Shown: one piece after another, positions 1,563 to 28,589 of the stretch
Numbering within the stretch: the stretch's first letter is position 1
Layout: every line of letters begins with the position of its first letter
Source: Mizuhopecten yessoensis
Lineage: Eukaryota
Assembly (NCBI RefSeq): GCF_002113885.1
Contig: NW_018408906.1
Location: 1-64,000, forward strand
Direction of reading: 5' to 3'
DNA length: 64,000 nucleotides
Notes under the pieces: generated by a model
The model's database searches: none
Seen by the model: only the letters and a program-made list of their open reading frames with translations
Told to the model about the DNA's origin: nothing
Position numbers and translations under genes: made by a program

Positions 1563-2791
1563 AACAAAAGGCACAATGGCCTAAGCGGTCACCTGAGTTA
1601 TATCATAGGTACTGGTAGCTTTATTTTATTGTTTAGATGTGATGTGGAAATCAGCATGTATACTCAGTGAAATACAATACTAATGTCATGTCATTAAAGG
1701 ATAAGAATTTGAAAATATTGGTAAATGTTCCCTTTGGGGCCCAACCCTAGCCCCTGGGTATGGGGCAGGAATCCCAATTTTACAATGTAATACCCTCATT
1801 ATTTAAAGATGATTCTGACTAACTTTGAGGAATTTTTCTGCTGAAAATGGATAAAATATACCCAAAAGTGTTATTTCCCTATATAAACTATAGTAAATTT
1901 TACCCCCACCCCAAAGGGGAACGGATGGGTCGGGGGTCCTGAAATTGATAATTTCAATAAAGCTCCCGATGATCTTTCTATCCATGCACTGAAATTGACT
2001 GTAGTACCTTCGAATCTGGAGAAGAAGGTTTTTAAAATATTGGTTAATTTTCCCTTTGGGGCCCCAACCTGGCTCAAGGGGTTGGGGTAGGAATCTAAAT
2101 TTTACAATTTAAAACCATCTTCCTCTAAGGATAATTCTCACCTAGTAAAAATAATTTCCTAAAGAAAATTGTCAAAATATACCCAAAAGTGTTATTTCCC
2201 TATATAAACTATAGTAAATTTTACCCCCACCCCAAAGGGGAACGGATGGGTCGGGGGTCCTGAAATTGATAATTTCAATAAAGCTCCCGATGATCTTTCT
2301 ATCCATGCACTGAAATTGACTGTAGTACCTTCGAATCTGGAGAAGAAGGTTTTTAAAATATTGGTTAATTTTCCCTTTGGGGCCCCANTCCTATATAAAC
2401 TATCGTAAATTGTATCCCCTCCCCAAGGGAGAACGGATAGCTCGGGGTCCTGAAATTTACAATTTAAATAAAGCCCATGATCATCTTTCTTTCCATGCAC
2501 TGAAATTGACTGTAGTACCTTCGAGTCTGGAGAAGAAGATTTTTGAAATATTGATTGATTTTCCCTTTGGGGTCCCGCCCTGGTCCCAGGGGTTGGGGTA
2601 GGAATCTCAATTTTACAATGTGTAACTTCATCTACTAAGGATGATTCTGACCAAGTTTGAAAAAATTCCATCCGCTGGTTCTTGAGAAGAAGTTGAAAAT
2701 GTAAAAAGTTTACGCACGACGGACGATGCACAACGACGGACGGAAAACGATTAGAATAGGTCACTTGAGCAAAGCTCAGATGACCTAAAAA
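1563..2791 (-). mobile_element. Non-autonomous Helentron-type element (HINE/DINE-1/pearl-like)
   Basis: One end is AACAA(A/G)AGGC..GGCCT hairpin + sub-TIR GGTCACCTGAG. The other end is GACGGACG microsatellite + AGGTCACTTGAG-CAAAG-CTCAGATGACCT inverted repeat + A-run. Internal tandem repeats. Confidence 0.8.
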
Positions 2792-3053
2792 GAAAGAATT
2801 ATATGTACCCTTCCAGAGCAATGATTTCATGTCGTGTAAAAAGTTCGGGTTCTTTAATTTGTTCCTTTGGCCAAAGAAAGGTGTCCTTTGCTAGATATGG
2901 CTTACATTTTATTTTTATATATATTTCTGACAGCAGTGACCTTCGTTTTTCAGAGGTCATATAACAGAAAGAGTAGTCATACGTGCGTCAATATTCATTA
3001 ATTAATTAAAAATCGAAAAACATCAATATGTATGCAAAGAAGATGTACAGATT

Positions 3054-4740
3054 AACAAGAGGCCCTGTGGCCTGAATAGCTCACTTGCTATGGTTATTAC
3101 CTCCATTATAACTCTGATAGACAGACGGATGATAATTTAGTGAAAGTCTCGTCTTACTTTTTCCCTGTTAACCAATTTTAGGATTTTAAAAGGACATAAG
3201 AACTCTCCAGGTCACCCTTTTGTATATACAAAGATGACCCCCGCTTAGGCAAATATTAGAATTTACCTGTATTTCTACTACTGGGCCATGTCCCTCTGCC
3301 ACCAGGAATGCCACACTCTCCTTTATTTACCTGTATTTCTACTACTGGGCCATGTCCCTCTGCCACCAGAAAGGCCACACTCTCCTTTATTTACCTGTAT
3401 TTCTCCTACAGGACCATGTCCCTTGCCACCAGGAACGCCACACTCTCCTTTATTTACCTGTATTTCTACTCCTGGGCCATGTCCCTCTGCCCCCAGGAAC
3501 GCCACTCTCTCCTTTATTTACCTGTATTTCTACTACTGGGACATGTCCCTCTGCCACCAGGAACGCCACACTCTCCTTTATTTACCTGTATTTCTACTAC
3601 TGGGACATGTCCCTCTGCCACCAGGAACGCCATACTCTCCTTTACTTACCTGTATTTCTACTACTGGGCCATGTCCCTCTGCCACCAGGAACGCCACTCT
3701 CTCCTTTATTTACCTGTATTTCTACTACTGGGCCATGTCCCTCTGCCACCAGGAACGCCACACTCTCCTTTGTTTACCTGTATTTCTGCTACTGGGCCAT
3801 GTCCCTCTGCCACCAGGAACGCCACTCTCTCCTTTATTTACCTGTATTTCTCCTACAGGACCATGTCCCTCTGCCACCAGGAACGCCACTCTCTCCTTTA
3901 TTTACCTGTATTTCTACTACTGGACCATGTCCCTCTGCCACCAGGAACGCCATACTCTCCTTTATTTACCTGTATTTCTACTACTGGGCCATGTCCCTCT
4001 GCCACCAGGAACGCCACTCTCTCTTTTCATACAATGAGTCCCCTTGGACCAAACACGCTCGAGACAGATCCAGCTTAAAATCCCTTTACTCCACTAAAAA
4101 GTAGTATTTCAAACATCTACAATATTTCCCATATAGCATCCCATCCCTCTGCCCCAAGGAACACCACACCCTCCGTTTATAAAACACTGAATCCCTTACG
4201 ACCAAAGGATGCCCTACACCAAATCAGGTTAAAATCCTGTTATCTCTTCTCTCTCTTAGTTCGAATTTTAAAGATGATCCTGTATTTTCTCTACTGGGTT
4301 CAATTCCTCTTACCCCCATGAGGGCTACAAACAAATGCAAATGAGGTTCAAAACAAATTAGATTAAAATACCATAACCTGTACTCAAAGAGTAGGATCTT
4401 ATAGATTAACCTATGTTTCTCCTCCGCTCCAAAGCAGGTTATACCTTATAACTGCTAGAGTCCCCTTGGCCAAAGGATACTTCAGAAAAATTGTGGTAAA
4501 AGTCCCTCTATCCCTACTCAAGAAACAGGATTTAAGATTTTCCTGTATTTCCGCTCTAATGGGCACCACCCGTCTGCCCCCAAAAATGTAACATCCTGCC
4601 AATAAACATTGATAGAGTCCCCTTGACCAAAGGATACTCCAGACTTACTAAGGTGAAAATCCCTATACTCAAGGAATAGGATTCAAAGTGTTTATGTTAT
4701 ATAACCCGTACTGGGCCCCTTCCCTCTGGAGTAAACAATA
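3054..4740 (-). mobile_element. Truncated HINE-like element containing the 64-bp VNTR (paralog from 19646)
   Basis: Terminus AACAAGAGGCCCTGTGGCCTGAATAGCTCACTTG at 3054; degenerate internal repeats; second terminus not found, so the right boundary is approximate. Confidence 0.55.
3263..4027 (+). repeat. 64-bp minisatellite, ~12 copies
   Basis: Unit CCTTTATTTACCTGTATTTCTACTACTGGGCCATGTCCCTCTGCCACCAGGAACGCCACTCTCT, spacing 63-64 bp. Explains the three overlapping 250-aa ORFs. Confidence 0.95.
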
Positions 4741-4988
4741 AATGATATACAGTACGGAACAATGTTTGGGGTTATATAGTATAACTCGGTACGGAACAAT
4801 GTTTGGGGTCTTATAGTATAACTCGTCTGTTTACCTAAACAATTCAAATTTAAGTTTAAACAGTCACATTTTGTAATCAATAGAAAATTTAATTATTATT
4901 TTTTCTTTCACAGGTACACAAAAGAAGACCTCAAGATCCTCCAGAAGTTACTTCCCTGTACACTTTTATTTCTCCCACATCCACAACC

Positions 4989-6644
4989 ATGGCAACCAAA
5001 CACAGCAGCCCCAGTCCACAAATTCCAGTCAGGATCAAAGGCCACACAAAGTGTCCGTACCATAAAGACAATGAGGTGGTTCTCCTCTGTCAGGACTGTG
5101 GAATACTGATCTGTACGACTTGTTCCATAACAACTCACAAAATACATATTGATAGCTTTTGTGAAATTTCGAAAATTACAAATGAACAAAAAAATACACT
5201 ACTGGACTTTATGAATGAAACAGAAAACATTGAAATTCCCAAACTCAAAAATGAAATCCAATCGGCAAGGAACGAAATTTCCACAAGTGAATCTAACTAC
5301 AAAAAACTCTCTGTTAATATCAAAAAACAGCGCGATCAATGTAAACTAGATTTAGATAAAATAACGGAGGATTATTTAGCAATATGTAACAAGATGGAGA
5401 AAGGGACCACAGACCTCCTTCAGATTCACATCACAAACCTGGAGGACAGGTTAGACACTTTAGTGAAACTCTCATCAGAGTGTAAACAGACCCTCCAGAC
5501 AGGCACTGCTGTACTTGTGTATGACTCGGTATCGGAAATCAAGGACATGGACTTAGATATCCGACAGACACCTATCATAGACATGACAGAGTTAACTCCA
5601 GATAACGACAGACAAAGTCACCTGGAGCAGGCCATGGGGAAAATGAAGACTCCTACTGACAATCTCCAGGCAGGATCAGCACCTAGTGGTCACTCCAAAC
5701 AAGGTCCAGTTGGGAGACCTAAACAGTCCAAATCTACAGAGACGGGTCAAGCCTCCACTGGAGCAGTCCTGTACAAACTCTGTGACAGTCCAACTGTCAT
5801 ATCTCAGTTCTTATACCCAGATCCTATCACATCAATCTGTCCTACATCTGATGGACGTGCATGGCTGTGTAATTATAAAACCAACACAGTAAAACTCATC
5901 AACAACAAAGGTAACTTTTTCTCCAACAAACCTAAAGTCATACAGAAGATACAACACAACAGTAACATCAGACACATCAGTCTGGACCCCACCACAGGTC
6001 GTCTGTGGTTCTGTTGTTTGGATGAGAGGACTATTTACGAGGTATCTACATCATCTACACCAGTCACAAGGTTTACTACAGAGGGATACCCAGTTAGTCT
6101 GTGTGTGACTAGGGAAGGTCGGGTATTGGTGGGTACATGGGGTAGACAGGGGTACAAAGGGGTGATGTACACAGCAGACGGCAATGTGTTACACACATCC
6201 ACTTTGGAGGGGTCAGGGGAGGGGGCAGTACAGTCCATCACACAGTGTGGTGTTACAGGTAACATAGCTATAGTGAGTAGTAAACTAATCAGTGGGGACT
6301 ATAGTGATCACAACAACTACAGGCATCACATCATTGTGTACAACGGGACACTCCAGTCCCTGGTCCACTACCGGGGAGAGGGGATACAGGCACGGGAGGC
6401 GATCACACCAGACATGCTTGATCCAGTAACAGTTGTATATGACAGTAAGGGTAATATTGTTATTGCTGACTATAGAAGGAACACAATAGAACTGATAAGT
6501 GGAGCAGGGAAGTACATAAAAACACTTCACACAAACAAAGGACAGGGGCAAGTAGGTATACAGAAGGATGATGTGTTGTGGTCACGCTTAAAGTTAGATA
6601 CAGGAGAGAAGGGACTCAAACTTCTCAAGTATTACAGTGACTGA
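4989..6644 (+). CDS. B-box / coiled-coil / NHL-like beta-propeller protein (RING-less TRIM-like), copy A, 551 aa
   Basis: B-box2 pattern CPYH...CQDC...ICTTC...H..H; heptad-rich helical region; C-terminal propeller blades (e.g. DPVTVVYDSKGNIVIADYRRNTIELI). Splice acceptor TTTTTCTTTCACAG at 4913 lies 75 nt upstream of the ATG. AATAAA at 6688 and 7612. Confidence 0.9.
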   Translation: MATKHSSPSPQIPVRIKGHTKCPYHKDNEVVLLCQDCGILICTTCSITTHKIHIDSFCEISKITNEQKNTLLDFMNETENIEIPKLKNEIQSARNEISTSESNYKKLSVNIKKQRDQCKLDLDKITEDYLAICNKMEKGTTDLLQIHITNLEDRLDTLVKLSSECKQTLQTGTAVLVYDSVSEIKDMDLDIRQTPIIDMTELTPDNDRQSHLEQAMGKMKTPTDNLQAGSAPSGHSKQGPVGRPKQSKSTETGQASTGAVLYKLCDSPTVISQFLYPDPITSICPTSDGRAWLCNYKTNTVKLINNKGNFFSNKPKVIQKIQHNSNIRHISLDPTTGRLWFCCLDERTIYEVSTSSTPVTRFTTEGYPVSLCVTREGRVLVGTWGRQGYKGVMYTADGNVLHTSTLEGSGEGAVQSITQCGVTGNIAIVSSKLISGDYSDHNNYRHHIIVYNGTLQSLVHYRGEGIQAREAITPDMLDPVTVVYDSKGNIVIADYRRNTIELISGAGKYIKTLHTNKGQGQVGIQKDDVLWSRLKLDTGEKGLKLLKYYSD

Positions 6645-7114
6645 GGAATGACTAAACCTGGAGTGATGATACAGACAAATTATACCAAATAAATACAAAA
6701 GGACGTTAATTTTAAAATTAAACGTTGACCTTTGTTATTATGATCTTATACACTTCCAACACTTACACAGACTAACAATATCATGTTTGAAGAATTAATG
6801 TAGACATGTCACAGATTTATTGTTTTGTAAATAGTTTCTGTTACAACTTCTGTTTAGAAGTGTTGTTTCAAAATAATGTCATCATTTATCTAACAAACTG
6901 CCATGCCGGAACATCAGGTTCATTTATTTTGGTGTGAAATATGTTCTTTTCAATCTTCAAGGAAAATGTCATTGATTTCTAAAACCTGCAATGAAATCTG
7001 AAATCAGCGTCTCTGTACTAATGACTTGTTTTCTAGGTGTATATCCTGACTGCCCCTATATTCTCAAGTAGACTGTTCCGAACACCTGATCTACATATAA
7101 AAGGACATCAAAAA

Positions 7115-12384: not shown

Positions 12385-13700
12385 TACTGAACAAAAAAAG
12401 AAACGCACAATTAAATTATGCAATCAATAGCCTATGATATTTTGGGAAATTTGTACAAAATTTTATATCAATATGAAGAGACAAGTCTACTCTTTACAAT
12501 ACTGTAGAAGAAAAGTCTGTGTGACGTCACTCGTGTCATCATGTAGTTACTCAAAGTGGGAATCCCGCGAAAAACAAAATGACACTTCAGTACCTGGTGT
12601 GGGCACCTTTTGCACGAATCCCTGCACGGTTTCTCATATTGTCCTATGCTTTGAATTCATGAGAACATTTATTCGCCTTAAGGGAATGTTGTTCCATTTT
12701 TGTGTTAATGCTGCGATCAACTGGGCGCGGTTAGTTGGGGGTTTTGACGTTTCCTAATACGCCTGTCCAGCTCATCACACAGATGCTCAATGGGGGACAT
12801 GTCGGGGCAATATGGGGGCCATTCCAGAGGCTGAACGTTGTTTGCCGTGTGAAAATCACGACAGACTCTGGCAACATGCGCTCGAGCATTGTCTTGCTGG
12901 AAAATTAGGTTATGACGTCTGAGAAGTAGAAGGACATGTGGTTGGAGGATCTGGTCTCTGTATCTAACGGCATTGAGGTTTTGATCCAGGACCGCTAAGG
13001 GGGATTTTACTCCATGGGAGATACCTCCCCAAACCATTACAGAAGCCCCACCCAATCTCTCGCGCTCAACCACGCATGCGTCGGTGAAACGCTAACCACG
13101 ACTGCGATATACCCTTTTTCTTCCGTCTGAGCGATACAGACAGAATCTAGACTCGTCGGTGAACATCACACGCCTCCATCGACGCATCCCAAACATATTC
13201 GGGTCATGCGCAACCAGTCAAGACGCACTTGCCGCCTCCGTGGTGTCAGAGGTGGGCCGACATAAGGTCGGCGCGCAATGATTCTCTCGGCACGCAAGCG
13301 GTTCCTGGCAGTTTGAGGACTAATGGGTCTGCCATGAGTACCTAAGGTATGCGACGCAGTCTCTAAAACAGTCTTGAATCTGTTGTGCAAGTGCAACAAT
13401 CGAATCGCCCTGTTTTGTCGTGCGGTCGTTACACGCGGACGACCGCTCCTGGGACGATCGGAAACTAACCCAGCAGCACGGAAACGTGTACAGAGACGGT
13501 TAATTGTACACGGGCCAACACCAAACTGCCGTGCGACAGCAGTTTGGCTATGACCATCCATCAACATCGCAATTGCTCTACCCCTCTGAATTTGCGTTAA
13601 ACGTGGCATCTTAGTCAATGGCGAAATCAAAATGCCAACGTGGAAAAATAATGTGGCTGAACTTAGAGTATCCGTTGAGATTATTTGTTTGAAAAACTCC
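12385..13700 (-). mobile_element. Tc1/mariner DNA transposon remnant, one TIR retained
   Basis: TA followed by TACTGAACAAAAAAAGAAACGCAC (Tc1-type terminus) at 12385; matching opposite TIR not found; contains a disrupted transposase. Confidence 0.85.
12587..13609 (-). pseudogene. Tc1-family DD34E transposase pseudogene
   Basis: MPRL start and HTH (RSGRPRVTT); VMFTDESRF; VMVWGGIS; FQQDNA-34 aa-SPIEH; C-terminal HTRY-stop. Frameshifts near 13200 and 12730 and an in-frame TAG at 13092-13094. Confidence 0.92.
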
Positions 13701-15985: not shown

Positions 15986-17531
15986 TCAGACATTTTCTAC
16001 AAAACAAGAGGCCCAGGCATCTTAATAGCTCACCTGGTATTTTATTTTCAATTTTAAACCTGATGAGTACCATACAGGTTTATCAAAGGATTACAAGAAG
16101 TACAAGTTGCAAGAAGAACCACATGTTAATATGTTAGGTGGGTACGTAAGACACCAAGAGAATGAGTTTCCATGTTATGTCCCAATGAGGTAGTCTCCAG
16201 GGGTTGGTCTGGACCTCCGGGCCAATCTTTGTGGCATGCTTTCTTTACCTCCTGTCTAGAAAAATATTGTAGTTGGTTATAGGATAAAACGTATAAATTA
16301 ATATGCAATGAGAAGGATTTATCGATTCACTTCTATTTCCCCTATTATGTCACACCCCTCTGCACGCTGGGGAGCCACACACTGTTTATACAAACTTGAG
16401 TTCCACTTGCCAAAGGATGTTCTAGACCTAATTTGGTTAAAATCCTTTCAATCACTTGGAAGGTGAAGGATTTAAAATTTTAAAATATTTGTAAATGACC
16501 TTGACTCCCGCCCAAATTATATGAAATAATACAAATATACAAAATTTAGTGATAATTCTCTATTCACACAGAATTTTTTTTTTTTTTAAATATTTCTCTT
16601 TATTTCCCCTATTCGACCCCTTCCTTCTGGCCCAAATACCAACATACTCTGTTTAAAACTTTATACAAAATCCCTTTTTCCCAAATATGCTCTAGAACAA
16701 GTTTGGTTAAAATCCCTTCCTTGGTAAAAAAGGAGAAAGATTTTTCCTCTATTTCCCTTATTGGGCCTCACATGCACCTCTCTGCCCCAAAGGGGGGCCA
16801 CAGCATGTATTCATAGAACTGGAATCTTTTTACCCTCAGCATATGATCGGCCTTATGGTTATTCAGAAAAAGTCGGGAACAGATTTTAAACACATTTGAC
16901 CCCGTGACCTTCAATATAAGTCAAGGTCATTCATTTGAACAAACTTAATAGCCCCCAGATATCAAAATTTTGGGCCTTATCGTTATACATAAATGTCGTT
17001 TAAAGGTGTAAAATATATCTGACCCCTGTGACCATGAATATAATTCAAATTCATTCATTGGAATAAACTAACAAATTTAACCCATGTGACCTTGAATATA
17101 AACCAATGTCATTGATTTGAACAAACTAGGTAGCCCTTAATCCCAAAATGTTACTGGCCAAATAACAGCAGCCTGAGCCTTTTGATTATTTAGAAGAAAT
17201 CGTTTAAAGATTTTTAACATAGTTGACCCCTTTGACCTTGAATGTCAGTCAAGGTCATTCACTTAATCAAACTTGGTAGCCCTTTATGCCAGCATGTTAC
17301 TGCCAAAACATCACTACCCTTGGCCTTTTTGTTAATCACAAGAAGTTGTTTAAAAGTTGTTTTAAGATATTAGACCCTGTGGCATTGGATATTAGTCAAG
17401 GTCATTGATTTGGTATGCAGATGTAGTATGGCATTGCGATCCTTTTCTGGTGCATCTTTTGCGACTACAGGATTAGTTTCGGCACTTTATGTAACGGTCC
17501 CTGTTACGAGTAGATATTGTTATACTTTATA

Positions 17532-18547
17532 AACAAGAGGCCCAAGGGGCCTTAGCGGTCACCTGAGTTATATCATAGGTACTGGTAGCTTTATTTTATT
17601 GTTTAGATGTGATGTGGAAATCAGCATGTATACTCAGTGAAATACAATACTAATGTCATGTCATTAAAGGATAAGAATTTGAAAATATTGGTAAATGTTC
17701 CCTTTGGGGACCAACCCTAGCCCCTGGGACTGGGGCAGGAATCCCAATTTTACAATGTAGTACTCTCATTCACCAAAGATGATTCTGACTAAGTTTGAGT
17801 AATTTTCTGCTGAAAATGGATAAAATATACCCAAAAGTGTTATTTCGCTATATAAGTTATAGTAAACTTTACCCCCACCCCAAAGGGGAACAGATGAATC
17901 AGGGGTCCCGAAATTGATAATTTCAATAAAGCTCCGGATGATCTTTCCATCCATGCACTGAAATTTACTATAGTACCTCTGAGTCTGGAGAGGAAGGTTT
18001 TTGAAATATTGGTTAATTTTCCCTTTGGGGACCCGCCCTGGCCCCAGGGGTTGGGGTAGGAATCTCAAATTTACAATTTTAACCATCTTACTCCAAGGAT
18101 AATTCTCACCAAGTAAAAATAATTTCCTACAAAAAAATGTTAAAATATACCCAAAAGTGTTATTTCTCTATATAAACTATTGTAAACTTTACCCCTTTCC
18201 AAGGGAGAACGGATAGCTCGGGGTCCTGCAATTTACAATTTAAATAAAGCCCCTGATGATCTTTCTTGCCATGCAGAGAAAATGACTGTAGTACCTTCGA
18301 GTCTGGAGAAGAAGATTTTTGAAATATTGGTTAATTTTCCCTTTGGGGCCCCGCCCTGGCTACAGGAGTTGTGGTAGGAATCCCAATTTTACAATTTTGT
18401 AGCCTCATCTACCAAGGATGATTCTGACCACTGGTTCTTGAGAAGAAGTTGAAAATGTAAAAAGTTTACGCACGACGGACGACGCACAACGACGGACGGA
18501 AAGCGATTAGAATAGGTCACTTGAGCAAAGCTCAGGTGACCTAAAAA
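17532..18547 (-). mobile_element. HINE-like element (paralog of 1563-2791)
   Basis: AACAAGAGGCCCAAGGGGCCTTAGCGGTCACCTGAG ... AGGTCACTTGAGCAAAGCTCAGGTGACCTAAAAA. Confidence 0.8.
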
Positions 18548-19907
18548 GAAAGAAATATATGTACCCTTCCAGAGCAATGATTTCATATCTGCTTTAGTAA
18601 ATTCATGTTGTGTAAAAAGTTCGGGTCCTTTAATTTGTTCCTTTGGCCAAAGAAAGGTGTTCTTTGTTAGATATGGCTTACATTTTATTTTTATATAGGG
18701 TATATCTCGCACAAATTGTGTTTTGAAAACGTCTCTATGTTTAGAATATATTCAGTGGAATTCCAACAAAATCAGTTCTTCTGATTCAAAAATAAATGAA
18801 TAATAAATAAATACAGGTATTGTCATCAAAAGAAGTGGTAGTATATGTGTTAACTCTCTCACAATTTAGGTGAACAGGATTGCGTTTGAATGTGTTTAAG
18901 AAGCTAGCTGCGCATACGTTGTATGAATCGGGCAACAGTAATTTTTTTTCATCGTCTAATTGAATCTGCGAAGATATTTTTAAAACTTCTGTTGCGTATT
19001 TCAAAAGCAAATGAATAGATTGGTAGATAACTCAATCAATAGCTTCTAGGCATGTTGTACATTGAACTATTAGTCATTTGATATCATGCCATCTCATCTA
19101 TTACATGTACACTTAGGCAAATTTTAAGACGCCATCCCCGATTGAGATGGAGAGTTGGGGTGAGAAATCGTGCCGGGTGAGAAAACGTGTCACTTATGCC
19201 CATATGTTTTGCACAATTTCTCACCCTGAGAAATTGTATTGCAAACGCAGCAATTTTAGCATGATTGTGAAATCGTGTCGGGGTGAGCAATCGTGCCGTA
19301 ACAAGGTGATATCAGAAAAACTGAAAAAAAAAATGTTTTAAATTACAAGTAGTATACATACTGTTTGTATATACCAATACGCGAAAGGACTATATCGTCA
19401 AATGGTGCGATTTCATAATTTCTTTTATCACTAGGAATATAAAATAAATCGTTTACGCTGTAAAAACCAAAAAAAGCATTTATTTAATATGTACGTAAAG
19501 CAGAAATGAAACATATTTCTGACAGCAGTGACCTTCGTTTTTCAGAGGTCATATAACAGAAAGAATAGTCATACGTGCGTCAATATTCATTAATTAATTA
19601 AAAATCGAAAAACATCAATATGTATGCAAAGAAGATGTACAGAATAACAAGAGGTCCTGTGGCCTGAATAGCTCACTTGCTATGGTTTCTTACCTCCATT
19701 ATAACTCTGATAGACAGACGGATGATAATTTACTGAAAGTCTCGTCTTACTTTTTCCCTGTTAACCAATTTTAGGATTTTAAAAGGACATAATAACTCTC
19801 CAGGTCACCCTTTTGTTTATACAAAGATGACCCCGCTTAGGCAAAGGATGCTCTGAATCAAATAGGTAAAAATCCTCATACGCAAATATTAGAATTTTAA
19901 AGATATG

Positions 19908-20156
19908 CCTGTATTTCTACTACTGGGCCATGTCCCTCTGCCACCAGGAACGCCACTCTCTCCTTTATTTACCTGTATTTCTACTACTGGGCCATGCCCT
20001 ATGCCACCAGGAACGCCACTCTCTCCTTTATTTACCTGTATTTCTACTACTGGCCCATGTCCCTCTGCCACCAGGAACGCCACACTCTCCTTTATTTACC
20101 TGTATTTCTACTACTGGGCCATGCCCTCTGCCACCAGGAACGCCACTCTCTCCTTT
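19908..20156 (+). repeat. 64-bp minisatellite, ~4 copies
   Basis: Same unit as 3263-4027. Confidence 0.95.
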
Positions 20157-21117
20157 CATACAATGAGTCCCCTTGGACCAAACACGCTCGAGACAGATCC
20201 AGCTTAAAATCCCTTTACTCCACTAAAAAGTAGTATTTCAAACAACTACAATATTTCCCATATAGCATCCCATCCCTCTGCCCCAAGGAACACCACACCC
20301 TCCGTTTATAAAACACTGAATCCCTTACGACCAAAGGATGCCCTACACCAAATCAGGTTAAAATCCTGTTATCTCTTCTCTCTCTTAGTTCGAATTTTAA
20401 AGATGTTCCTGTATTTTCTCTACAGGGTTTAATTCCTCTTACCCCCATGAGGGCTACAAACAAATGCAAATGAGGTTCAAAACAAATTAGATTAAAATAC
20501 CATAACCTGTACTCAAAGAGTAGGATATTATAGAATAACCTATGTTTCTCCTCCGCTCCAAAGCAGGTTATACCTTATAACTGATAGAGTCCCCTTGGCC
20601 AAAGGATACTTCAGAAAAATTGTGGTAAAAGTCCCTCTATCCCTACTCAAGAAACAGGATTTAAGATTTTCCTGTATTTCCGCTCTAATGGGCACCACCC
20701 GTCTGCCCCCAAAAATGTAACATCCTGCCAATAAACATTGATAGAGTCCCCTTGACCAAAGGATACTCCAGACTTACTAAGGTGAAAATCCCTATACTCA
20801 AGGAATAGGATTCAAAGTGTTTATGTTATATAACCCGTACTGGGCCCCTTCCCTCTGGAGTAAACAATAAATGATATACAGTACGGAACAATGTTTGGGG
20901 TTATATAGTATAACTCGGTACGGAACAATGTTTGGGGTCTTATAGTATAACTCGTCTGTTTACCTAAACAATTCAAATTTAAGTTTAAACAGTCACATTT
21001 TGTAATCAATAGAAAATTTAATTATTATTTTTTCTTTCACAGGTACACAAAAGAAGACCTCAAGATCCTCCAGAAGTTACTTCCCTGTACACTTTTATTT
21101 CTCCCACATCCAAAACC

Positions 21118-22773
21118 ATGGCAACCAAACACAGCAGCCCCAGTCCACAAGTTCCAGTCAGGATCAAAGGCCACACAAAGTGTCTGTACCATAAGGACAA
21201 TGAGGTGGTTCTCCTCTGTCAGGACTGTGGATTACTGATCTGTACGACTTGTTCCATAACAACTCACAAAACACACATTGATAGCTTTTGTGAAATTTCG
21301 AAAATTACAAATGAACAAAAAAATACACTACTAGACTTTATGAATGAAACAGAAAACATTGAAATTCCCAAACTCAAAAATGAAATCCAATCGGCAAGGA
21401 ACGAAATTTCGACAAGTGAATCTAACTACAAAAAACTCTCTGTAAATATTAAAAAACAGCGCGATCAATGTAAACTAGATTTAGATAAAATAACGGAGGA
21501 TCATTTAGCAATATGTAACAAGATGGAGAAGGGGACCACAGACCTCCTTCGGATTCACATCACAAACCTGGAGGACAGGTTAGACACTTTAGTTAAACTC
21601 TCATCAGAGTGTAAACAGACCCTCCAGACAGGCACTGCTGTACTTGTGTATGACTCGGTATCAGAAATCCAGGACATGGACTTAGATATCCCACAGGCAC
21701 CTTACATAGACATGACAGAATTTACTCCAGATAACAACAGACAACGTCACCTGGAGCAGGCCATGGGGAAAATGAAGACTCCTACTGACCATTTTAAGGC
21801 AGGATCAGCACCTAGTGGTCACTCCGAACAAGGTCCAGTTGTGAGACCTAAACTGTCCAAATCTACAGAGACGGGTCAAGCCTCCACTGGAGCAGTCCTG
21901 TACACACTTTGTGACAGTCCAACTGTCATATCCCAGTTCTCATACCCAGGTGGTATCTCATCAATCTGTCCTACATCTAATGGACGTGCATGGCTGTGTC
22001 ATTATAAAACCAACACAGTAAAACTCATCAACAACAAAGGTAACTTTTTCTCCAACAAACCTAAAGTCATACAGAAGATACAACACAACAGTAACATCAC
22101 AGACATCAGTCTGGACCCCACCACAGGTCGTCTGTGGTTCTGTTGTAAGGCTGAGAGGTCTATCTGTGAAGTATCTACATCATCTACACCAGTCACAAGG
22201 TTTACTACAGAGGGGGACCCTAACAGTCTGTGTGTGACCAGGGAAGGTCGGGTAGTGGTGGGTACAGGAGGGAGACAGGGGTACAAGGTGGTGATGTACA
22301 CAGCAGACGGCCAGGTGTTACACACAGCCACTGTGGAGGGGTCAGGGACGGGGTCAGTACTGTCCATCGCACAGTGTGGTGTTACAGGTAACATAGCTAT
22401 AGTGAGTAGTAAACTTATCAGTGGAGACAGTAGTGATCCAAACAACTATAGGCGTCACATCACTGTGTACAACCCAACACTCCAGTTCCTGGTCCACTAC
22501 CGGGGAGAGGGGATACAGGCACGGGAGGCGATCACACCAGACAAGTTTGATCCAGTAACAGTTGTATATGACAGTAAGGGTAATATTGTTATTGCTGACT
22601 ATAGAAGGAACACAATAGAACTGATAAGTGGAGCAGGGAAGTACATAAAAACACTTCACACAAACAAAGGACAGGGACAAGTAGGTATACAGAAGGATGA
22701 TGTGTTGTGGTCATGCTTAGAGTTAGATACAGGAGAGTGGGGACTCAAACTTCTCAAGTATTACAGTGACTGA
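21118..22773 (+). CDS. B-box / coiled-coil / NHL-like beta-propeller protein (RING-less TRIM-like), copy B, 551 aa
   Basis: Ungapped alignment to copy A with ~55 amino-acid differences (~90% identity); acceptor AG at 21041-21042. Confidence 0.9.
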   Translation: MATKHSSPSPQVPVRIKGHTKCLYHKDNEVVLLCQDCGLLICTTCSITTHKTHIDSFCEISKITNEQKNTLLDFMNETENIEIPKLKNEIQSARNEISTSESNYKKLSVNIKKQRDQCKLDLDKITEDHLAICNKMEKGTTDLLRIHITNLEDRLDTLVKLSSECKQTLQTGTAVLVYDSVSEIQDMDLDIPQAPYIDMTEFTPDNNRQRHLEQAMGKMKTPTDHFKAGSAPSGHSEQGPVVRPKLSKSTETGQASTGAVLYTLCDSPTVISQFSYPGGISSICPTSNGRAWLCHYKTNTVKLINNKGNFFSNKPKVIQKIQHNSNITDISLDPTTGRLWFCCKAERSICEVSTSSTPVTRFTTEGDPNSLCVTREGRVVVGTGGRQGYKVVMYTADGQVLHTATVEGSGTGSVLSIAQCGVTGNIAIVSSKLISGDSSDPNNYRRHITVYNPTLQFLVHYRGEGIQAREAITPDKFDPVTVVYDSKGNIVIADYRRNTIELISGAGKYIKTLHTNKGQGQVGIQKDDVLWSCLELDTGEWGLKLLKYYSD

Positions 22774-23850
22774 GGAGTGACTAAACCTGGAGTAATGCTA
22801 CAGACAAATTATACCAAATAAATACAAAAAGACGTTAATTTTAACATTAAACTTTGACCTTTGTTATTATGATCTTATACACTTGATCAACACTTATACA
22901 GACTAACAATATCATGTTTGAGGAATTAATGTGAACATGTCACAGGTTTATTGTTTTTGTAAATAGTTTCTGTTACAACTTCTGTTTAGAAGTGTTGTTT
23001 CAAAATAATGTCATCATTAATTTTAACAAACAGCCATGCCGGAACATCAGGTTCATTTATTTTGGTATGAAATATGTTCTTTTCAACCTTCAAGAAAAAT
23101 GTCATTGATTTCTAAAACCTGCAATGAAATCTGAAATCAGCGTCTCTGTACTAATGACTTGTTTTTTAGGTGTATAACCTGACTTCCCTTATATCCTCAA
23201 GTAGACTGTTCTAAAAACCTGATCTACCCATAAATATTGGGCATGGACCTTGTGTACATATCGAAGGACATCAAAAACAGTAAATCTGCTATGCTGAACT
23301 AGCCAGTAGTGAAGTGGGGATAAACCACTCAAACAAACAGAAACATCACTGATTGTGTCACTAACACAGTTCCAATATACAAGTATTGTCATCATTCATT
23401 GTTACAAATCAGCTCTTCCCAAACATCAGGTCTGTAATATGTTCTTTTCAGTATTCAAAAACAAGGTCATTGATTTCAAAAACCTGCAATGAAATCTGAA
23501 ACCAGCGTCTCTGACTTAAATTGACCTGTTCTCTAGGTGTAAAACCTGACTTCCCTTATACCACACCTAAAGTGACCTAGGATTGAGGTTTTAATTTCGT
23601 TGTTACATGATGAGATGGAGATTTTCATTGGACAGATAAATGAAATGTTTGCTGTGAGTGTGTATGAGTCAGAATCTCTGAACGTGTTGTTAAATGTGTC
23701 ACCTAAGCACTTGGATATGTTTGGTCTGAAAGTTAAGAAGATGTTTGGTCTGAAAGTTAAGAAGATGCCTCACAAATATCAGTAAAGAAATTATTATGTA
23801 TGCCATGCAAGTTGTGTGACAGTGAGTGACCACAAAGATGTTTAATGTTG

Positions 23851-25404: not shown

Positions 25405-26198
25405 TCTTTCAAACGACTTATTCTGTAGAACTATGCACTGGATATCAATCATATTTAATCAGAAGCATTCATGGGAGGCAGGGATTCAAAATTGTACAAA
25501 TGGTGTGGCTGACCCCCGTGGCGGCTGACGGGCGGGGCCGAAAAGGGTCATTTAGCTATATTACTTTAAGCGACTTCTTCTCTGGAACTAAGAAATAGAT
25601 ATCAACCATATTTGACTGGAAGCATCCCTAGGTGGTGGGGATTCAAAATTGTACAAATGGCGGGGCTGACCCCCCAGGGGGCTGAGGGCTGGGCCAAAAG
25701 GGGGCAATTTGGCTATATTGCTATAAACGACTTCTTCCGTAGAACTATACCATGGATATTGATCATATTTGGTCAGAAGCAATCATGGGAGGCAGGGATT
25801 CAAAATTGTACAAATGATGGGGCTGACATCCCTCCTCCCTCTGGCCCCACCCTTTGAGACTTAACCCCTGGGTCACAACTTTGAAACGGTTAAGATCCCC
25901 ACCCCAAAACTATATATACAAATGCTGGGCAAAAAGAGACAAATGCAGTCGTGATATTAGAATTGATCCTGGGGTCTGGCCACAACCCTAGGGACCTAGT
26001 TTCTGAGTCACAGCTTGGAAACAGTTGAGATCCCCACCCCATAACCATACATAAAATTGCTGGGCATAAAATATCAAATACAGATATGCTACAAGCCTTG
26101 GGGTCTGGCATATTCCCCGTTGATCTCATTTGGAGAATATTTTGCCATGATTGCTTAGATATCCAGGTGAGCGATACAGGTCCTCTGGGCCTCTTGTT
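25405..26198 (+). mobile_element. 5'-truncated HINE-like element, inverted relative of 10061-11645
   Basis: Reverse-complement similarity to 10061-11080; terminus CAGGTGAGCGATACAGGTCCTCTGGGCCTCTTGTT. Confidence 0.8.
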
Positions 26199-26249
26199 TA
26201 ATTTTGCTTTGGTTTTTATCTCGCCATCATCAGATGGTAGGCTGTTCCA

Positions 26250-27932
26250 ATCGCACCCTCGTCTGTGGTCTATCAACCATCCGCCGTCTATCCTATAGCC
26301 CCCTCGTCTGTGATCCATCAACCGTCCGTCGTCTATCCTATAGCCCCCCCGTCTGTGGTCTCTCAACCGTCCCCCGTCTATCCTATAGCCCCCTCGTCCT
26401 TGGTCTATCCTATAGCCCCCTCGTCTGTGTTCTATCCTATAGCCCCCTCGTCTGTGTTCTATCCTATAGCCCCCTCGTCCGTGGCCTATCCTATAGCCCC
26501 CTCGTCTGTGGTCGATCCTATAGCCCCCTCGTCCGTCGTCTTTCCTATAGCCCCCTCGTCTGTGGTCTATCCCCCATCCGCCGTCTATCCTATAGCCCCC
26601 TCGCCTGTTGTCTATCAAGCATCCGCCGTCTATCCTATAGCCCCCCCGTCTGTGATCCATCAACCGTCCGTCGTCTACCCTATAGCCCCCCCGTCTGTGG
26701 TCTCTCAACCGTCCCCCGTCTATCCTATAGCCCCCTCGTCGCCGTTCTATCAACCATCCGCCGTCTATCTTATAGCCCCCTCGTCTGTGGTCTCTCCTAT
26801 AGCCCCCTCGTCTGTGGTCAATCAACCATCCGCCGTCTATCCTATAGACCCCTCGTCTGTGATCCATCAACCGTCCGTCGTCTACCCTATAGCCCCCCCG
26901 TCTGTGGTCTATCACCCGTCCGCCGTCTATCCTATAGCCCCCTCGCCTGTTGTCTATCAAGCATCCGCCGTCTATCCTATAGCCCCCCCGTCTGTGGTCT
27001 CTCAACCGTCCCCCGTCTATCCTATAGCCCCCTCGTCGCCGTTCTATCAACCATCCGCCGTCTATCTTATAGCCCCCTCGTCTGTGGTCAATCAACCATC
27101 CGCCGTCTATCCTATAGACCCCTCGTCTGTGATCCATCAACCGTCCGCCGTCTATCCTATATCCCCCTCGTCTGTGGTCTATCAACCATCCGTCGTCTAT
27201 CCTATAGCCCCCTCGTCAGTGGTCTATCCTATAGCCCCCTCGTTCGTGGGCTATCCTATAGCCCCCTCGTCCGTCGGCTATCCTATAGCCCCCCCGTCTG
27301 TGATCCATCAACCGTCCGTCGTCTATCATATAGCCCCCTCGTCCGTGGTCTATCAACCATCCGCCGTCTTTCCTATAGCCCCCTCGTCTGTGGTCCATCA
27401 ACCATCCGCCGTCTATCCTATAGACCCCTCGTCTGTGGTCTATCCTATAGACCCCTCGTCTGTGGTCTATCCTATAGACCCCTCGTCTGTGGTCTATCCT
27501 ATAGGCCCCTCGTCCGTGGTCTTTCCTATAGCCCCCTCGTCCGTCGTCTATCATATAGCCCCCTCGTCCGTGGTCTATCAACCATCCGCCGTCTTTCCTA
27601 TAGCCCCCTCGTCTGTGGTCTCTCCTATAGCCCCCTCGTCTGTGGTCCATCAACCATCCGCCGTCTATCCTATAGCCGCCTCGTCTGTGGTCTATCAACC
27701 ATCCGTCGTCTATCCTATAGCCCCCTCGTCCTTGGTCTATCCTATAGCCCCCTCGTCCGACGTCTCTCCTATAGCCCCCCCGTCCGTCGTCTATCCTAAA
27801 GCCCCCCCGTCTGTGGACTATCAACCGTCCGCCGTCTATCCTATAGCCCCCCCGTCTGTGATCCATCAACCGTCCGTCGTCTATCCTATAGCCCCCTCGT
27901 CTGTGGTCTATCCTATAGCCCCCTCGTCTGTG
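26250..27932. repeat. GC-rich composite minisatellite (27-bp core plus optional 18-bp module)
   Basis: Core TCTATCCTATAGCCCCCTCGTCTGTGG with optional TCTATCAACCATCCGCCG. Modules are multiples of 9 bp, which produces the long repetitive ORFs on both strands. Confidence 0.95.
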
Positions 27933-28589
27933 ATGGTTTCTATGAGCGGTAGGTTCCTATTGCTCACATGAAGGAATGTAGCAAACATAGAAGGGTTAAT
28001 GGGAAAGCTATTGAGTGGAAGTGATAGCCGTATGTTCTCGCGCACGTGTTGGAATTATCTCGTGGATAGCTTTACAATTCGTTACAATGTGTCTCACTCG
28101 AATGTGGAGTGCGTACGAACTTTACACAGGGTCATGTTGTACTCTATATTTCACCGAATTGTGGTGGAAACTTAGAAACCCACTTGCCGCCACATGCCGT
28201 GTTATTGTTAAGTTTGAATGTAGTCGTATAATAAAAGTGTAAAGTCTATATCTGCCTAAGTTGTTTTTGTCACAAATCTCTGCTTCCTCTCTACTATTTC
28301 TTACTTTATTTAAAATCCATGGAACCTGCAAGCGAAAGCGTCAGTCGAACCCGAGTGAGTAGATAACGTTTGTTACATTTCTGTGTAGTCTGATATGTTT
28401 AACATTTGATATTTCCAACAAATAATCAAAAGAGCATGTATATGTATTGAGGTATAACTTAACATAAACAAGTCCTTATATTTAGTTCAGAAAAATGTGC
28501 AGAAAAGGTCAAAGGCAACAGGTGGTACATTGTGATAGTCGGTACAGTCTTAGTAGAGTTCTACAGGGTTCGTTAGCAGTCTGAAATGT

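What the first reader, a model, noticed from the sequence alone, without database searches (positions are those of the whole stretch)
5800..6644. Hypervariable beta-propeller face in twin B-box/NHL genes, more divergent than the neighbouring intron
Seen (manual count): ~6 amino-acid differences in the first 184 residues, ~14 in the linker and ~35 in the propeller, whereas the ~880 bp of intron just upstream differs at only ~7 positions. Changes are radical, often multi-nucleotide, and recur at equivalent blade positions: YPDPIT/YPGGIS, NIRHI/NITDI, CLDER/CKAER, GYPVSL/GDPNSL, TWGR/TGGR, EGAVQSI/TGSVLSI, DMLDP/DKFDP. Established: NHL propellers (Brat, LIN-41/TRIM71) bind ligands on the top face formed by these loops. 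Inference: a diversifying intracellular recognition system, driven by positive selection or patchwork gene conversion among paralogs, possibly innate immune.
Basis: partly seen in the sequence, partly recalled or inferred. Interest (0 to 1): 0.75.

Follow-up and report, generated by a model that had tools for sequence, protein, structure and literature searches.

The report
Scallop B-box/NHL twins, hypervariable propeller face
Two neighbouring scallop genes from a very large family encode proteins whose six-bladed propeller changes amino acids unusually fast at about two positions per blade on one face, the pattern expected of a germline-encoded set of recognition proteins.

Summary
Gene A (4989-6644) and gene B (21118-22773) are single-exon 551-codon twins with 55 amino-acid differences: 6 in residues 1-184, 14 in the linker, 35 in the propeller. 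The 889 bp upstream differ at 8 positions.

They are RING-less B-box/coiled-coil/NHL-propeller genes of Mizuhopecten yessoensis, from a family with hundreds of candidate copies.

I defined 29 hypervariable propeller codons from proteins of other scallop species. In 12 M. yessoensis paralogs these codons give omega about 4.5 (LRT 27.7) and dN>dS in 52 of 55 pairs. The rest of the propeller gives 0.67 and the B-box/coiled coil 0.5.

The hypervariable codons lie in or beside the beta-d/beta-a and beta-b/beta-c loops, which define the ligand-binding "top" face of NHL propellers. None lies in bottom-face loops.

Paralogs are mosaics of exchanged tracts.

The intron is a poor yardstick. It is a recently homogenised stretch (0.9%), against 4.6% in low-copy flank and 6.6% in the 3'UTR.

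An immune or recognition function is inferred, not shown. The scan had already noted the same family pattern on five other pieces of this genome. My eight paper searches found no report of it.

The parts
4989..6644 (+). Gene A: single-exon CDS of 551 codons plus stop (B-box, coiled coil, linker, NHL propeller)
   Evidence: ORF; Pfam B-box and NHL; AF2 model
21118..22773 (+). Gene B: tandem twin, 551 codons, 90% amino-acid identity to A
5043..5147 (+). B-box zinc finger (residues 19-53); no RING precedes it
   Evidence: PF00643 E=6e-8. Cys/His ligands are invariant in 35 sequences. NCBI models of the paralogs start at the same ATG
5238..5555 (+). Long predicted helices (residues 84-189), read as a coiled coil
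   Evidence: DSSP of the AF2 model
5556..5774 (+). Low-confidence, probably disordered linker (residues 190-262); omega about 1 for the slightly wider tested class 185-262
5775..6641 (+). Six-bladed NHL propeller (residues 263-551; 24 strands; the N-terminal strand closes blade 6)
   Evidence: AF2 pLDDT about 90. Foldseek top hits are NHL domains of TRIM2, TRIM3, LIN-41/TRIM71, Thin and Brat, with target-normalised TM about 0.7
5823..5825 (+). Codon 279, the most variable site: 9 amino acids in 12 paralogs; beta-d6/beta-a1 loop
5871..5879 (+). Codons 295-297, hypervariable; beta-b1/beta-c1 loop
5970..5975 (+). Codons 328-329, hypervariable; start of beta-a2
6018..6023 (+). Codons 344-345, hypervariable; beta-b2/beta-c2 loop
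6087..6095 (+). Codons 367-369; 367 and 369 are hypervariable, at the start of beta-a3
6138..6140 (+). Codon 384, hypervariable; end of beta-b3
6219..6233 (+). Codons 411-415; 411, 413 and 415 are hypervariable, in the beta-d3/beta-a4 loop and the start of beta-a4
6300..6302 (+). Codon 438, in the beta-b4/beta-c4 loop
6471..6473 (+). Codon 495, hypervariable; beta-b5/beta-c5 loop
6585..6611 (+). Codons 533-541; 533, 535 and 541 are variable, from the end of beta-b6 to the start of beta-c6
4100..4913 (+). Last part of the upstream intron. A and B are nearly identical here: 8 mismatches in the 889 bp of 4100-4988, which also takes in the 75-bp 5'UTR
4914..4988 (+). 5'UTR part of the coding exon, after the ttcacag|GT acceptor
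   Evidence: sequence; 45 spliced reads end at 4918
6645..7101 (+). 3'UTR/downstream segment shared with dispersed paralogs; homology ends at about 7101
4994..5463 (+). Tract identical to paralog L008 on another contig (271 consecutive polymorphic sites)
5888..6263 (+). Tract of A whose nearest relative is paralog L006 (95-98%), although L006 is only 55-64% identical to A at the 5' end
22317..22542 (+). Tract of B whose nearest relative is paralog L003 (97%)

Best explanation
A and B are tandem paralogs of a very large, lineage-specific scallop family of RING-less B-box/coiled-coil/NHL-propeller proteins. About two positions per blade change amino acid under positive diversifying selection: the first residues of strand beta-a with the preceding beta-d/beta-a loop, and the end of strand beta-b with the beta-b/beta-c loop. 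All lie on the propeller's top face. The surrounding framework stays nearly invariant even at the nucleotide level, because paralogs frequently exchange tracts by gene conversion. The exon therefore looks more divergent than the intron for three reasons. (i) The intron stretch just upstream is a recently homogenised A-B tract. (ii) Most dispersed paralogs share homology only from about the splice acceptor to the end of the 3'UTR, so they can import divergence into the exon but not into most of this intron. (iii) Selection keeps different residues at the hypervariable codons. By inference, the B-box and coiled coil assemble the protein into dimers or higher-order arrays, as in TRIM proteins. 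The variable top face would then give each paralog a different ligand specificity (RNA or protein), making a germline-encoded intracellular recognition repertoire, most plausibly for innate defence. What is shown: the architecture, the fold, the position of the variable sites, selection and conversion. What is inferred: assembly, the ligand and an immune role.
For: Architecture: Pfam finds a B-box and NHL. The AF2 model has a confident propeller of 24 strands. Foldseek's best hits are TRIM2, TRIM3, LIN-41, TRIM71, Thin and Brat NHL domains. No RING is found, and the NCBI models have the same length as my ORFs.

Family size: 700 first-look candidates (79 scored) and 91 matches at E<=1e-10 in the same genome. 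Close relatives were found only in scallops.

Position of variable sites: 18 propeller codons have 5 or more amino acids among 12 paralogs. Of these, 13 fall in my top-loop class, 5 sit 1-3 residues inside adjoining strands, and 0 fall in bottom loops. The same positions are the most variable in 27 proteins not labelled M. yessoensis; of the top 29, 20 are top, 7 core and 2 bottom. [quoted passage not shown]

Selection: the 29 independently defined codons give omega 4.5, with LRT 27.7 on segment trees and 30.0 on one tree. NG86 dN is 0.548 against dS 0.285, and dN>dS in 52 of 55 pairs. The bootstrap CI of pN-pS is 0.071-0.239.

Controls: equally high-entropy sites in the B-box/coiled coil give omega 0.5 and in the linker 1.0. 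None of 1000 random 29-codon classes reaches the LRT. Codon positions 1 and 2 are more diverse than position 3 only at these codons. For A against B, 14 of the 36 propeller amino-acid differences fall on the 29 codons (Fisher 3.8e-7).

Conversion: the nearest paralog changes along the gene. L006 sits in a deep clade at 100% support for codons 1-125, but is sister to A at 88% and 99% support for codons 263-350 and 351-440. At 64 of the 93 A-B differences both states occur in other paralogs. The PHI-like statistic is 0.371 against 0.435 +/- 0.0075, reached by 0 of 1000 permutations. The run test gives p<=0.01 in 11 of 55 pairs.

Intron yardstick: 8/889 in the intron against 55/1200 in low-copy flank (Fisher 3.7e-7) and 30/457 in the 3'UTR.

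Generality: in 5 of 6 tandem pairs from subfamilies only 33-39% identical to A, differences are enriched at the homologous positions.
Against: A against B alone does not prove selection. Over the whole propeller omega is 0.77, and at the 29 codons dN is 0.37 against dS 0.117 with Fisher p=0.079.

Synonymous divergence is also somewhat higher at the hypervariable codons (dS 0.285 against 0.164; alpha 1.0 against 0.75). Several synonymous changes sit next to non-synonymous ones, as short imported patches would produce.

Site-by-site tests are weak with 12 sequences. Only 11 sites reach p<0.05 in my FEL-like test, close to what multiple testing alone could give.

The codon-model code is my own and uses a coarse grid. 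Recombination violates its tree assumption; segment trees and tree-free pairwise counts mitigate this but do not remove it.

I had no 3D coordinates, so 'top face' rests on strand order, not on measured exposure.

Transcription of A or B themselves is not shown. The raw RNA reads carry paralog-specific letters, and the contig runs are only guessed to be RNA.

Nothing here tests ligand binding or an immune role.
Confidence: 0.75

Rival explanations
1. There is relaxed constraint plus gene conversion only. The variable codons are simply unconstrained loop positions, and the patchwork of imported tracts makes them look hypervariable without any selection for change.
For: Whole-propeller omega is below 1 for A against B (0.77). 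The linker evolves at omega about 1. Synonymous changes cluster with non-synonymous ones. A-B at the 29 codons is not significant by itself (p=0.079).
Against: Relaxation cannot raise omega above 1, yet the independently defined class gives 4.5 with LRT 27.7-30.0 and dN>dS in 52 of 55 pairs. Equally variable sites in the B-box/coiled coil give 0.5. Codon positions 1 and 2 exceed position 3 only at these codons.
Confidence: 0.08
2. This is an assembly artefact. A and B are two haplotypes of one locus placed in tandem, so the differences are allelic polymorphism, not paralog divergence.
For: Bivalve assemblies often keep both haplotypes (recalled, from no call). A third copy (L008, contig C76708) is collinear with unit B and its downstream flank at 91-95%, so some copies in this set could be haplotigs. 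Read depth over A and B could not be checked because read laying was already used.
Against: A and B lie in one stretch with no assembly gap between them; there are only three single Ns before 24114. The roughly 9 kb after A is not collinear with what follows B. The selection and position results rest on 12 loci on 11 contigs and on other species. Even if true, this rival would turn the finding into extreme allelic diversity at the same sites.
Confidence: 0.05
3. The evolutionary mechanism is the same but the purpose is not immune. The repertoire could diversify RNA-target specificity for post-transcriptional control (for example of transposons or germline transcripts), or serve self/non-self or gamete recognition.
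For: Known TRIM-NHL proteins (Brat, LIN-41/TRIM71, NHL-2) are RNA regulators that use the same face (PMC4015489 passages; PMC5908797 and PMC6351104 abstracts in listings). No infection data were examined for these genes.
Against: Known regulatory TRIM-NHLs are few per genome and conserved (3 in flies, 4 in C. elegans, 5 in mammals; PMC4015489 passage). Hundreds of fast-evolving lineage-specific copies fit conflict-driven families better. Oyster TRIM-like genes are associated with OsHV-1 survival and Perkinsus tolerance (PMC9437489 and PMC9892467, passages), but these are different genes in different species.
Confidence: 0.25

Closest known systems
TRIM-NHL proteins (Brat, LIN-41/TRIM71, TRIM2, TRIM3, Thin)
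   Same: They share a B-box, a coiled coil and a six-bladed NHL propeller, and are the best structural matches. [quoted passage not shown]
   Different: The scallop genes have no RING and no filamin domain. They are single coding exons with hundreds of lineage-specific copies rather than 3-5 conserved genes. Their top face is hypervariable instead of conserved.
Diversified TRIM families of vertebrates (TRIM5alpha, fish finTRIM) with positively selected B30.2/SPRY loops
   Same: Both have a TRIM-type B-box/coiled-coil scaffold, lineage-specific tandem expansion, and positive selection concentrated in the loops of the C-terminal recognition domain. The B30.2 detail is recalled; PMC3137616 and PMC3845644 were seen only as listing abstracts.
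   Different: The variable module here is an NHL propeller, not B30.2. There is no RING, so no intrinsic E3 ligase activity is expected.
Podospora anserina HNWD (het-d/e/r) WD40-repeat allorecognition genes
   Same: Both use a beta-propeller as the recognition module. [quoted passage not shown]
   Different: HNWD proteins are STAND NTPases, and their WD repeats are near-identical units that shuffle within a gene. Here the blades are not nucleotide-level repeats of each other, exchange is between genes, and the N-terminus is a B-box/coiled coil.
Bivalve B-box/TRIM-like gene expansions
   Same: A B-box-type zinc-finger orthogroup is expanded in bivalves: 8.9 copies per bivalve against 0.1 in outgroups (table row in PMC8382680). 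TRIM-like genes are associated with disease outcomes in oysters (PMC9437489, PMC9892467).
   Different: The passages I read describe copy number or expression. None describes site-specific hypervariability of an NHL face.

Membership tests
TRIM-NHL (class VII TRIM) | N-terminal RING finger | tested here: not met
   No RING family appears in the Pfam scan at E<=1. The protein starts 18 residues before the B-box. The NCBI models of paralogs have the same lengths as my ORFs, and their precomputed domains include none I recognise as a RING family (accession identities recalled).
TRIM-NHL (class VII TRIM) | B-box zinc finger | tested here: met
   PF00643 scores 33.1 bits against a cutoff of 24.1. 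The Cys/His ligands are invariant in 35 sequences.
TRIM-NHL (class VII TRIM) | Coiled coil after the B-box | tested here: met
   AF2 predicts helices 84-171 and 174-189. This is a prediction only.
TRIM-NHL (class VII TRIM) | Six-bladed NHL propeller at the C-terminus | tested here: met
   Pfam NHL scores 20.7 bits against a cutoff of 20. The model has 24 strands. Foldseek E is 6e-14 to 2e-11 to NHL domains, with target-normalised TM about 0.7.
TRIM-NHL (class VII TRIM) | RNA binding by an electropositive top face | not testable with these tools
   No coordinates or electrostatics were available, and no binding data exist.
Diversified innate recognition gene family (works-like class, e.g. TRIM5/finTRIM) | Large lineage-specific expansion in tandem arrays | tested here: met
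   There are 700 first-look candidates and 91 matches at E<=1e-10, several sharing a contig. Close homologs were found only in Pectinidae.
Diversified innate recognition gene family (works-like class, e.g. TRIM5/finTRIM) | Positive selection focused on the ligand-binding surface | tested here: met
   Omega is 4.5 at 29 independently defined codons, 20 in top loops and 2 in bottom loops.
Diversified innate recognition gene family (works-like class, e.g. TRIM5/finTRIM) | Response to, or binding of, pathogens | not tested
   No infection data set was examined. The RNA runs laid have unknown conditions.
HNWD-type propeller diversification | Highly similar tandem repeat units within one gene that shuffle | tested here: not met
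   Only one 20-nt chance-level direct repeat is found in 5750-6644.
HNWD-type propeller diversification | Recombination or concerted evolution between family members | tested here: met

The most novel reading that the evidence does not exclude
Scallops, and probably other bivalves, may carry a germline-encoded repertoire of hundreds of RING-less TRIM-like sensors. In these, the NHL propeller's RNA-binding face would be the variable, antigen-receptor-like module. Each paralog would recognise a different foreign RNA or protein. Inter-paralog gene conversion would keep a common scaffold while shuffling a small alphabet of about 12 contact patches. That would be an NHL-based counterpart of TRIM5/finTRIM or of plant and fungal NLR repertoires.
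Probability: 0.35. Interest if true: 0.8.

Novelty: new variant of a known kind. Interest (0 to 1): 0.6.

Why it matters
Bivalves lack adaptive immunity and suffer mass mortalities from viruses and parasites, and their genomes hold huge unexplained expansions of TRIM-like genes. If the expansion concentrates adaptive change on the one propeller face that binds ligands in Brat and LIN-41, these 'uncharacterized' genes become testable candidate specificity determinants. It also gives a short list of residues to swap in binding assays. For genome annotation, it is a caution against using a neighbouring intron as a neutral yardstick in multigene families that undergo conversion.

Tried and rejected
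Whole-domain dN/dS for A against B gave omega 0.17 (B-box/coiled coil), 1.49 (linker) and 0.77 (propeller). None is significantly above 1, so the twin comparison alone cannot show selection.

My first topological classes (loops plus or minus 2 residues) were too broad. Top gave omega 1.0-1.5 and was not significant. 'Core' gave 1.5, because five hot codons sit just inside strands.

The site-by-site FEL-like test has little power with 12 sequences: 11 sites at p<0.05.

The first run test counted gaps as matches and produced false signals for L011 and L014. I repeated it on ungapped columns.

The 5' exon was not found in the window with up to 2 mismatches. BLAST of the L004 exon-1 region against the window gave no hit. 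The first exon of A and B therefore stays unknown, and contig C5579 begins only 4.9 kb upstream of A.

Eight paper searches found no report of a hypervariable NHL face in molluscs. Subscription journals and supplementary files were not seen and may hold one.

I considered retroposition as the origin of the exon-only homology. I rejected it because homology starts 25-40 bp upstream of the acceptor and the intron is retained.
Full report
WHAT IS THERE. The window holds two uninterrupted 551-codon ORFs on the + strand: A at 4989-6644 and B at 21118-22773. They have the same length and no indels. They differ at 93 bases in 78 codons, of which 55 change the amino acid and 23 are synonymous only.

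A and B sit in a duplicated unit of about 7 kb: 293-7101 matches 16259-23234. What follows each unit is not collinear, and there is no assembly gap between them.

WHAT THE GENES ARE. Pfam finds a B-box (residues 19-53, 33 bits) and marginal NHL and other propeller matches. It finds no RING. Homologs carrying names come from Mizuhopecten yessoensis, Pecten maximus, Ylistrum balloti and Argopecten irradians, and are labelled 'uncharacterized' or 'TRIM2-like' (46 proteins at E<=1e-20 among 5951 candidates). The NCBI models of the M. yessoensis paralogs have the same lengths as my ORFs, so no upstream coding exon adds a RING.

An AlphaFold2 model built on 35 sequences has a mean pLDDT of 75. It shows a B-box, long helices at 84-189, a low-confidence linker and a confident propeller (pLDDT about 90) of 24 strands, that is six blades of four. 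Foldseek against the PDB puts NHL domains first: TRIM2, TRIM3, LIN-41/TRIM71, Thin and Brat (E 6e-14 to 2e-11, target-normalised TM about 0.7).

The same genome has 700 first-look candidates, of which 79 were scored, and 91 matches at E<=1e-10. These are lower bounds.

THE INTRON YARDSTICK. The 889 bp before the ATG differ at 8 positions, or 0.9%. A ttcacag|GT acceptor lies at 4913/4914. In four runs there is no RNA depth from 2883 to 4814. In run X24, 45 reads break at 4918 and continue into sequence not present in the window. That sequence maps about 3 kb upstream of paralog L004, next to a GT donor, and its surroundings have no counterpart in the window. So the acceptor is used in the family, and the upstream stretch is intronic by homology. 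The first exon of A and B was not found.

This stretch is not a neutral baseline. The low-copy part of the duplicated flank (293-1492) differs at 55 of 1200 positions, or 4.6% (Fisher against the intron 3.7e-7). The 3'UTR differs at 30 of 457, or 6.6%. Synonymous sites of the B-box/coiled coil give 9 of 114. The stretch is poorly conserved in L003, L004 and L008, so constraint does not explain its identity. A recent A-B homogenising tract does. Against the 4.6-6.6% baseline, the propeller's 62 differences in about 867 bp (about 7%) are only moderately raised.

MOSAIC STRUCTURE. I extracted 12 close paralogs from 11 contigs. Their nearest-neighbour relations change along the gene:
- A is 100% identical to L008 over CDS bases 1-450.
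- A is closest to L006 (95-98%) over bases 900-1275, although L006 is only 55-64% identical to A at the 5' end.
- B is closest to L003 (97%) over bases 1200-1425 and to L008 (99%) at the 3' end.

Segment trees conflict with high support. L006 lies in a deep clade (100%) for codons 1-125, but is sister to A at 88% and 99% for codons 263-350 and 351-440. At 64 of the 93 A-B differences both states occur in other paralogs; 16 are private to B, 13 private to A, and none has neither state elsewhere. A four-gamete PHI-like statistic is 0.371 against 0.435 +/- 0.0075 in permutations, reached by 0 of 1000. A longest-run test gives p<=0.01 for 11 of 55 pairs.

Most dispersed paralogs share homology only from about 4750-5110 to 7101. 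They can therefore donate to the exon and UTR but not to the intron.

WHERE THE VARIATION SITS. Among the 12 paralogs, 18 propeller codons carry five or more amino acids: 278, 279, 295-297, 328, 329, 344, 345, 367, 369, 384, 413, 415, 495, 521, 533 and 541. They recur twice per blade. One spot is the beta-d/beta-a loop with the first residues of beta-a. The other is the end of beta-b with the beta-b/beta-c loop.

I defined classes from the model's strands (loops plus or minus 2 residues). Thirteen of the 18 fall in 'top', five fall 1-3 residues inside the adjoining strands, and none falls in 'bottom'. [quoted passage not shown] TRIM2, TRIM3 and TRIM71 have the same six-blade build, with the termini in blade 6 (PMC9634614 passages).

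At the nucleotide level these are single codons that vary within an almost invariant frame. Codon 279, for example, reads CCT/GGT/GTT/GAA/ACT/GAT/CGT/AGT/CTT between constant GAT and ATC.

SELECTION. To avoid circularity I defined the hypervariable class from the 27 aligned proteins not labelled M. yessoensis; one of them, P0031, carries no label. The class is the 29 propeller columns (10%) of highest entropy. They coincide with the M. yessoensis hot spots: 20 top, 7 core, 2 bottom.

I then tested this class on the M. yessoensis coding sequences. A codon model of my own (MG-type, F3x4, a 15x15 grid of synonymous and non-synonymous rates, iqtree branch lengths) gave the following:

| Class | Omega | LRT |
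|---|---|---|
| 29 hypervariable codons, five segment trees | 4.5 | 27.7 (p 1.4e-7) |
| 29 hypervariable codons, one tree | 4.5 | 30.0 |
| Rest of the propeller | 0.67 | |
| B-box/coiled coil | 0.5 | |
| Linker | 1.0 | |

(all).

Tree-free Nei-Gojobori counts agree. For the class, dN is 0.548 against dS 0.285, and dN>dS in 52 of 55 pairs. The bootstrap CI of pN-pS is 0.071-0.239. For the rest of the propeller, dN is 0.091 against dS 0.164, and dN>dS in 8 of 55 pairs.

Controls also agree. The top-10% entropy sites of the B-box/coiled coil, with the same entropy range, give omega 0.5, and those of the linker give 1.0. None of 1000 random 29-codon classes reaches the LRT; the maximum is 13.0. 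Diversity at codon positions 1, 2 and 3 is 0.42, 0.39 and 0.23 in the class. It is 0.10, 0.07 and 0.11 in the rest of the propeller and 0.18, 0.13 and 0.26 in the B-box/coiled coil.

For the twins themselves, 14 of the 36 amino-acid differences in residues 263-551 fall on the 29 codons (Fisher 3.8e-7). There dN is 0.37 against dS 0.117, which alone is not significant (p=0.079). Elsewhere in the propeller dN is 0.042 against dS 0.092.

RESULTS AGAINST, OR WEAKER.
- Whole-propeller omega for A-B is 0.77.
- dS is about 1.3-1.7 times higher at the hot codons, and synonymous changes often sit beside non-synonymous ones. This fits short imported patches.
- Site-wise tests give only 11 sites at p<0.05, and 28 sites with posterior above 0.9, of which 22 are in the propeller.
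- My code is uncalibrated apart from the controls above, and conversion violates tree models.
- Transcription of A itself is only suggested. Contigs of runs X1 and X5 match A's exon with 0-3 differences over 64-226 bases and show no depth in the intron, but their RNA status is a guess. The raw RNA reads carry letters of other paralogs.

GENERALITY. In six tandem pairs from subfamilies only 33-39% identical to A (loci L020-L030), differences are enriched at the positions homologous to the 29 codons in five pairs (Fisher p from 8.8e-5 to 0.042; the sixth gives 0.14). Top-loop differences exceed bottom-loop differences in all six.

The scan had already noted the same pattern on five other pieces of this genome. 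Four follow-ups reached the same reading, and one found no positive selection in its array. I looked these up after my own tests.

HOW IT MOST LIKELY WORKS. Shown: a RING-less B-box/coiled-coil/NHL protein family, adaptive change confined to one propeller face, and frequent exchange of tracts between paralogs that keeps the scaffold uniform. Inferred: the B-box and coiled coil mediate self-assembly as in TRIM proteins, the variable face sets ligand specificity, and the family acts as an intracellular recognition repertoire, most plausibly in defence. Without a RING the proteins are unlikely to be E3 ligases themselves.

Support for an immune role is indirect. A B-box orthogroup is expanded in bivalves (PMC8382680, table row). 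TRIM-like genes are associated with OsHV-1 survival and Perkinsus tolerance in oysters (PMC9437489 and PMC9892467, passages).

COMPARISON AND NOVELTY. The fold and face match the TRIM-NHL proteins. The evolutionary mode matches TRIM5/finTRIM (recalled for the B30.2 detail) and the Podospora HNWD propeller genes (PMC2873952 abstract). Unlike HNWD, the blades here are not nucleotide-level repeats. None of my eight searches found a description of a hypervariable NHL face in molluscs. Supplements and subscription journals were not seen. I rate it a new variant of a known kind, with interest 0.6.

Noticed in passing
window 3288-4100 and 19908-20156: A 64-bp tandem repeat lies inside the upstream intron. 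It has about 13 copies before gene A but only about 4 before gene B, and gives long ORFs in three frames. A related array lies before paralog L008.
   Followed up: partly
window 1563-2380 (and 17529-18346): A high-copy repeat of about 820 bp gives 11,860 first-look candidates in the genome at 88-90% identity. The adjoining stretch 2400-2882 (partly the same repeat) has high depth in the RNA-like runs, and reads break at 2756/2757 and 2790/2791.
   Followed up: partly
window 12717-13630 (-): Two adjacent ORFs look like a Tc1/mariner-type transposase split in two: a helix-turn-helix part and a DDE-like part. They lie between the twin genes.
   Followed up: no
window 25890-27971: A GC-rich (55%) tandem repeat gives long ORFs on both strands with GGYRIDHRR-like units. 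A diverged copy (about 80%) follows L008 on contig C76708.
   Followed up: no
window 52435-56007 (+): A single ORF of 1190 aa has what looks like an EF-hand-like segment and WD40-like repeats. It is apparently an intronless gene unrelated to the finding.
   Followed up: no
L008 (G000:C76708:537877-539583): This paralog carries an in-frame 18-residue internal duplication in blade 3 (SLCVTRE..TRFTTEG repeated). It sits in a region collinear with unit B at 91-95%, so it is either a haplotig or a further segmental duplicate.
   Followed up: partly
L037 (G000:C3396:587029-587051, -) and L004: RNA reads of run X24 join a 5'UTR exon about 3 kb upstream of paralog L004 to the acceptor homologous to window 4914. 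This exon has no counterpart in the window.
   Followed up: yes
L011, L014 (G000:C5562, C5391): Two otherwise intact paralogs have in-frame deletions of about 27-28 residues in the disordered linker, consistent with the linker being under little constraint.
   Followed up: no
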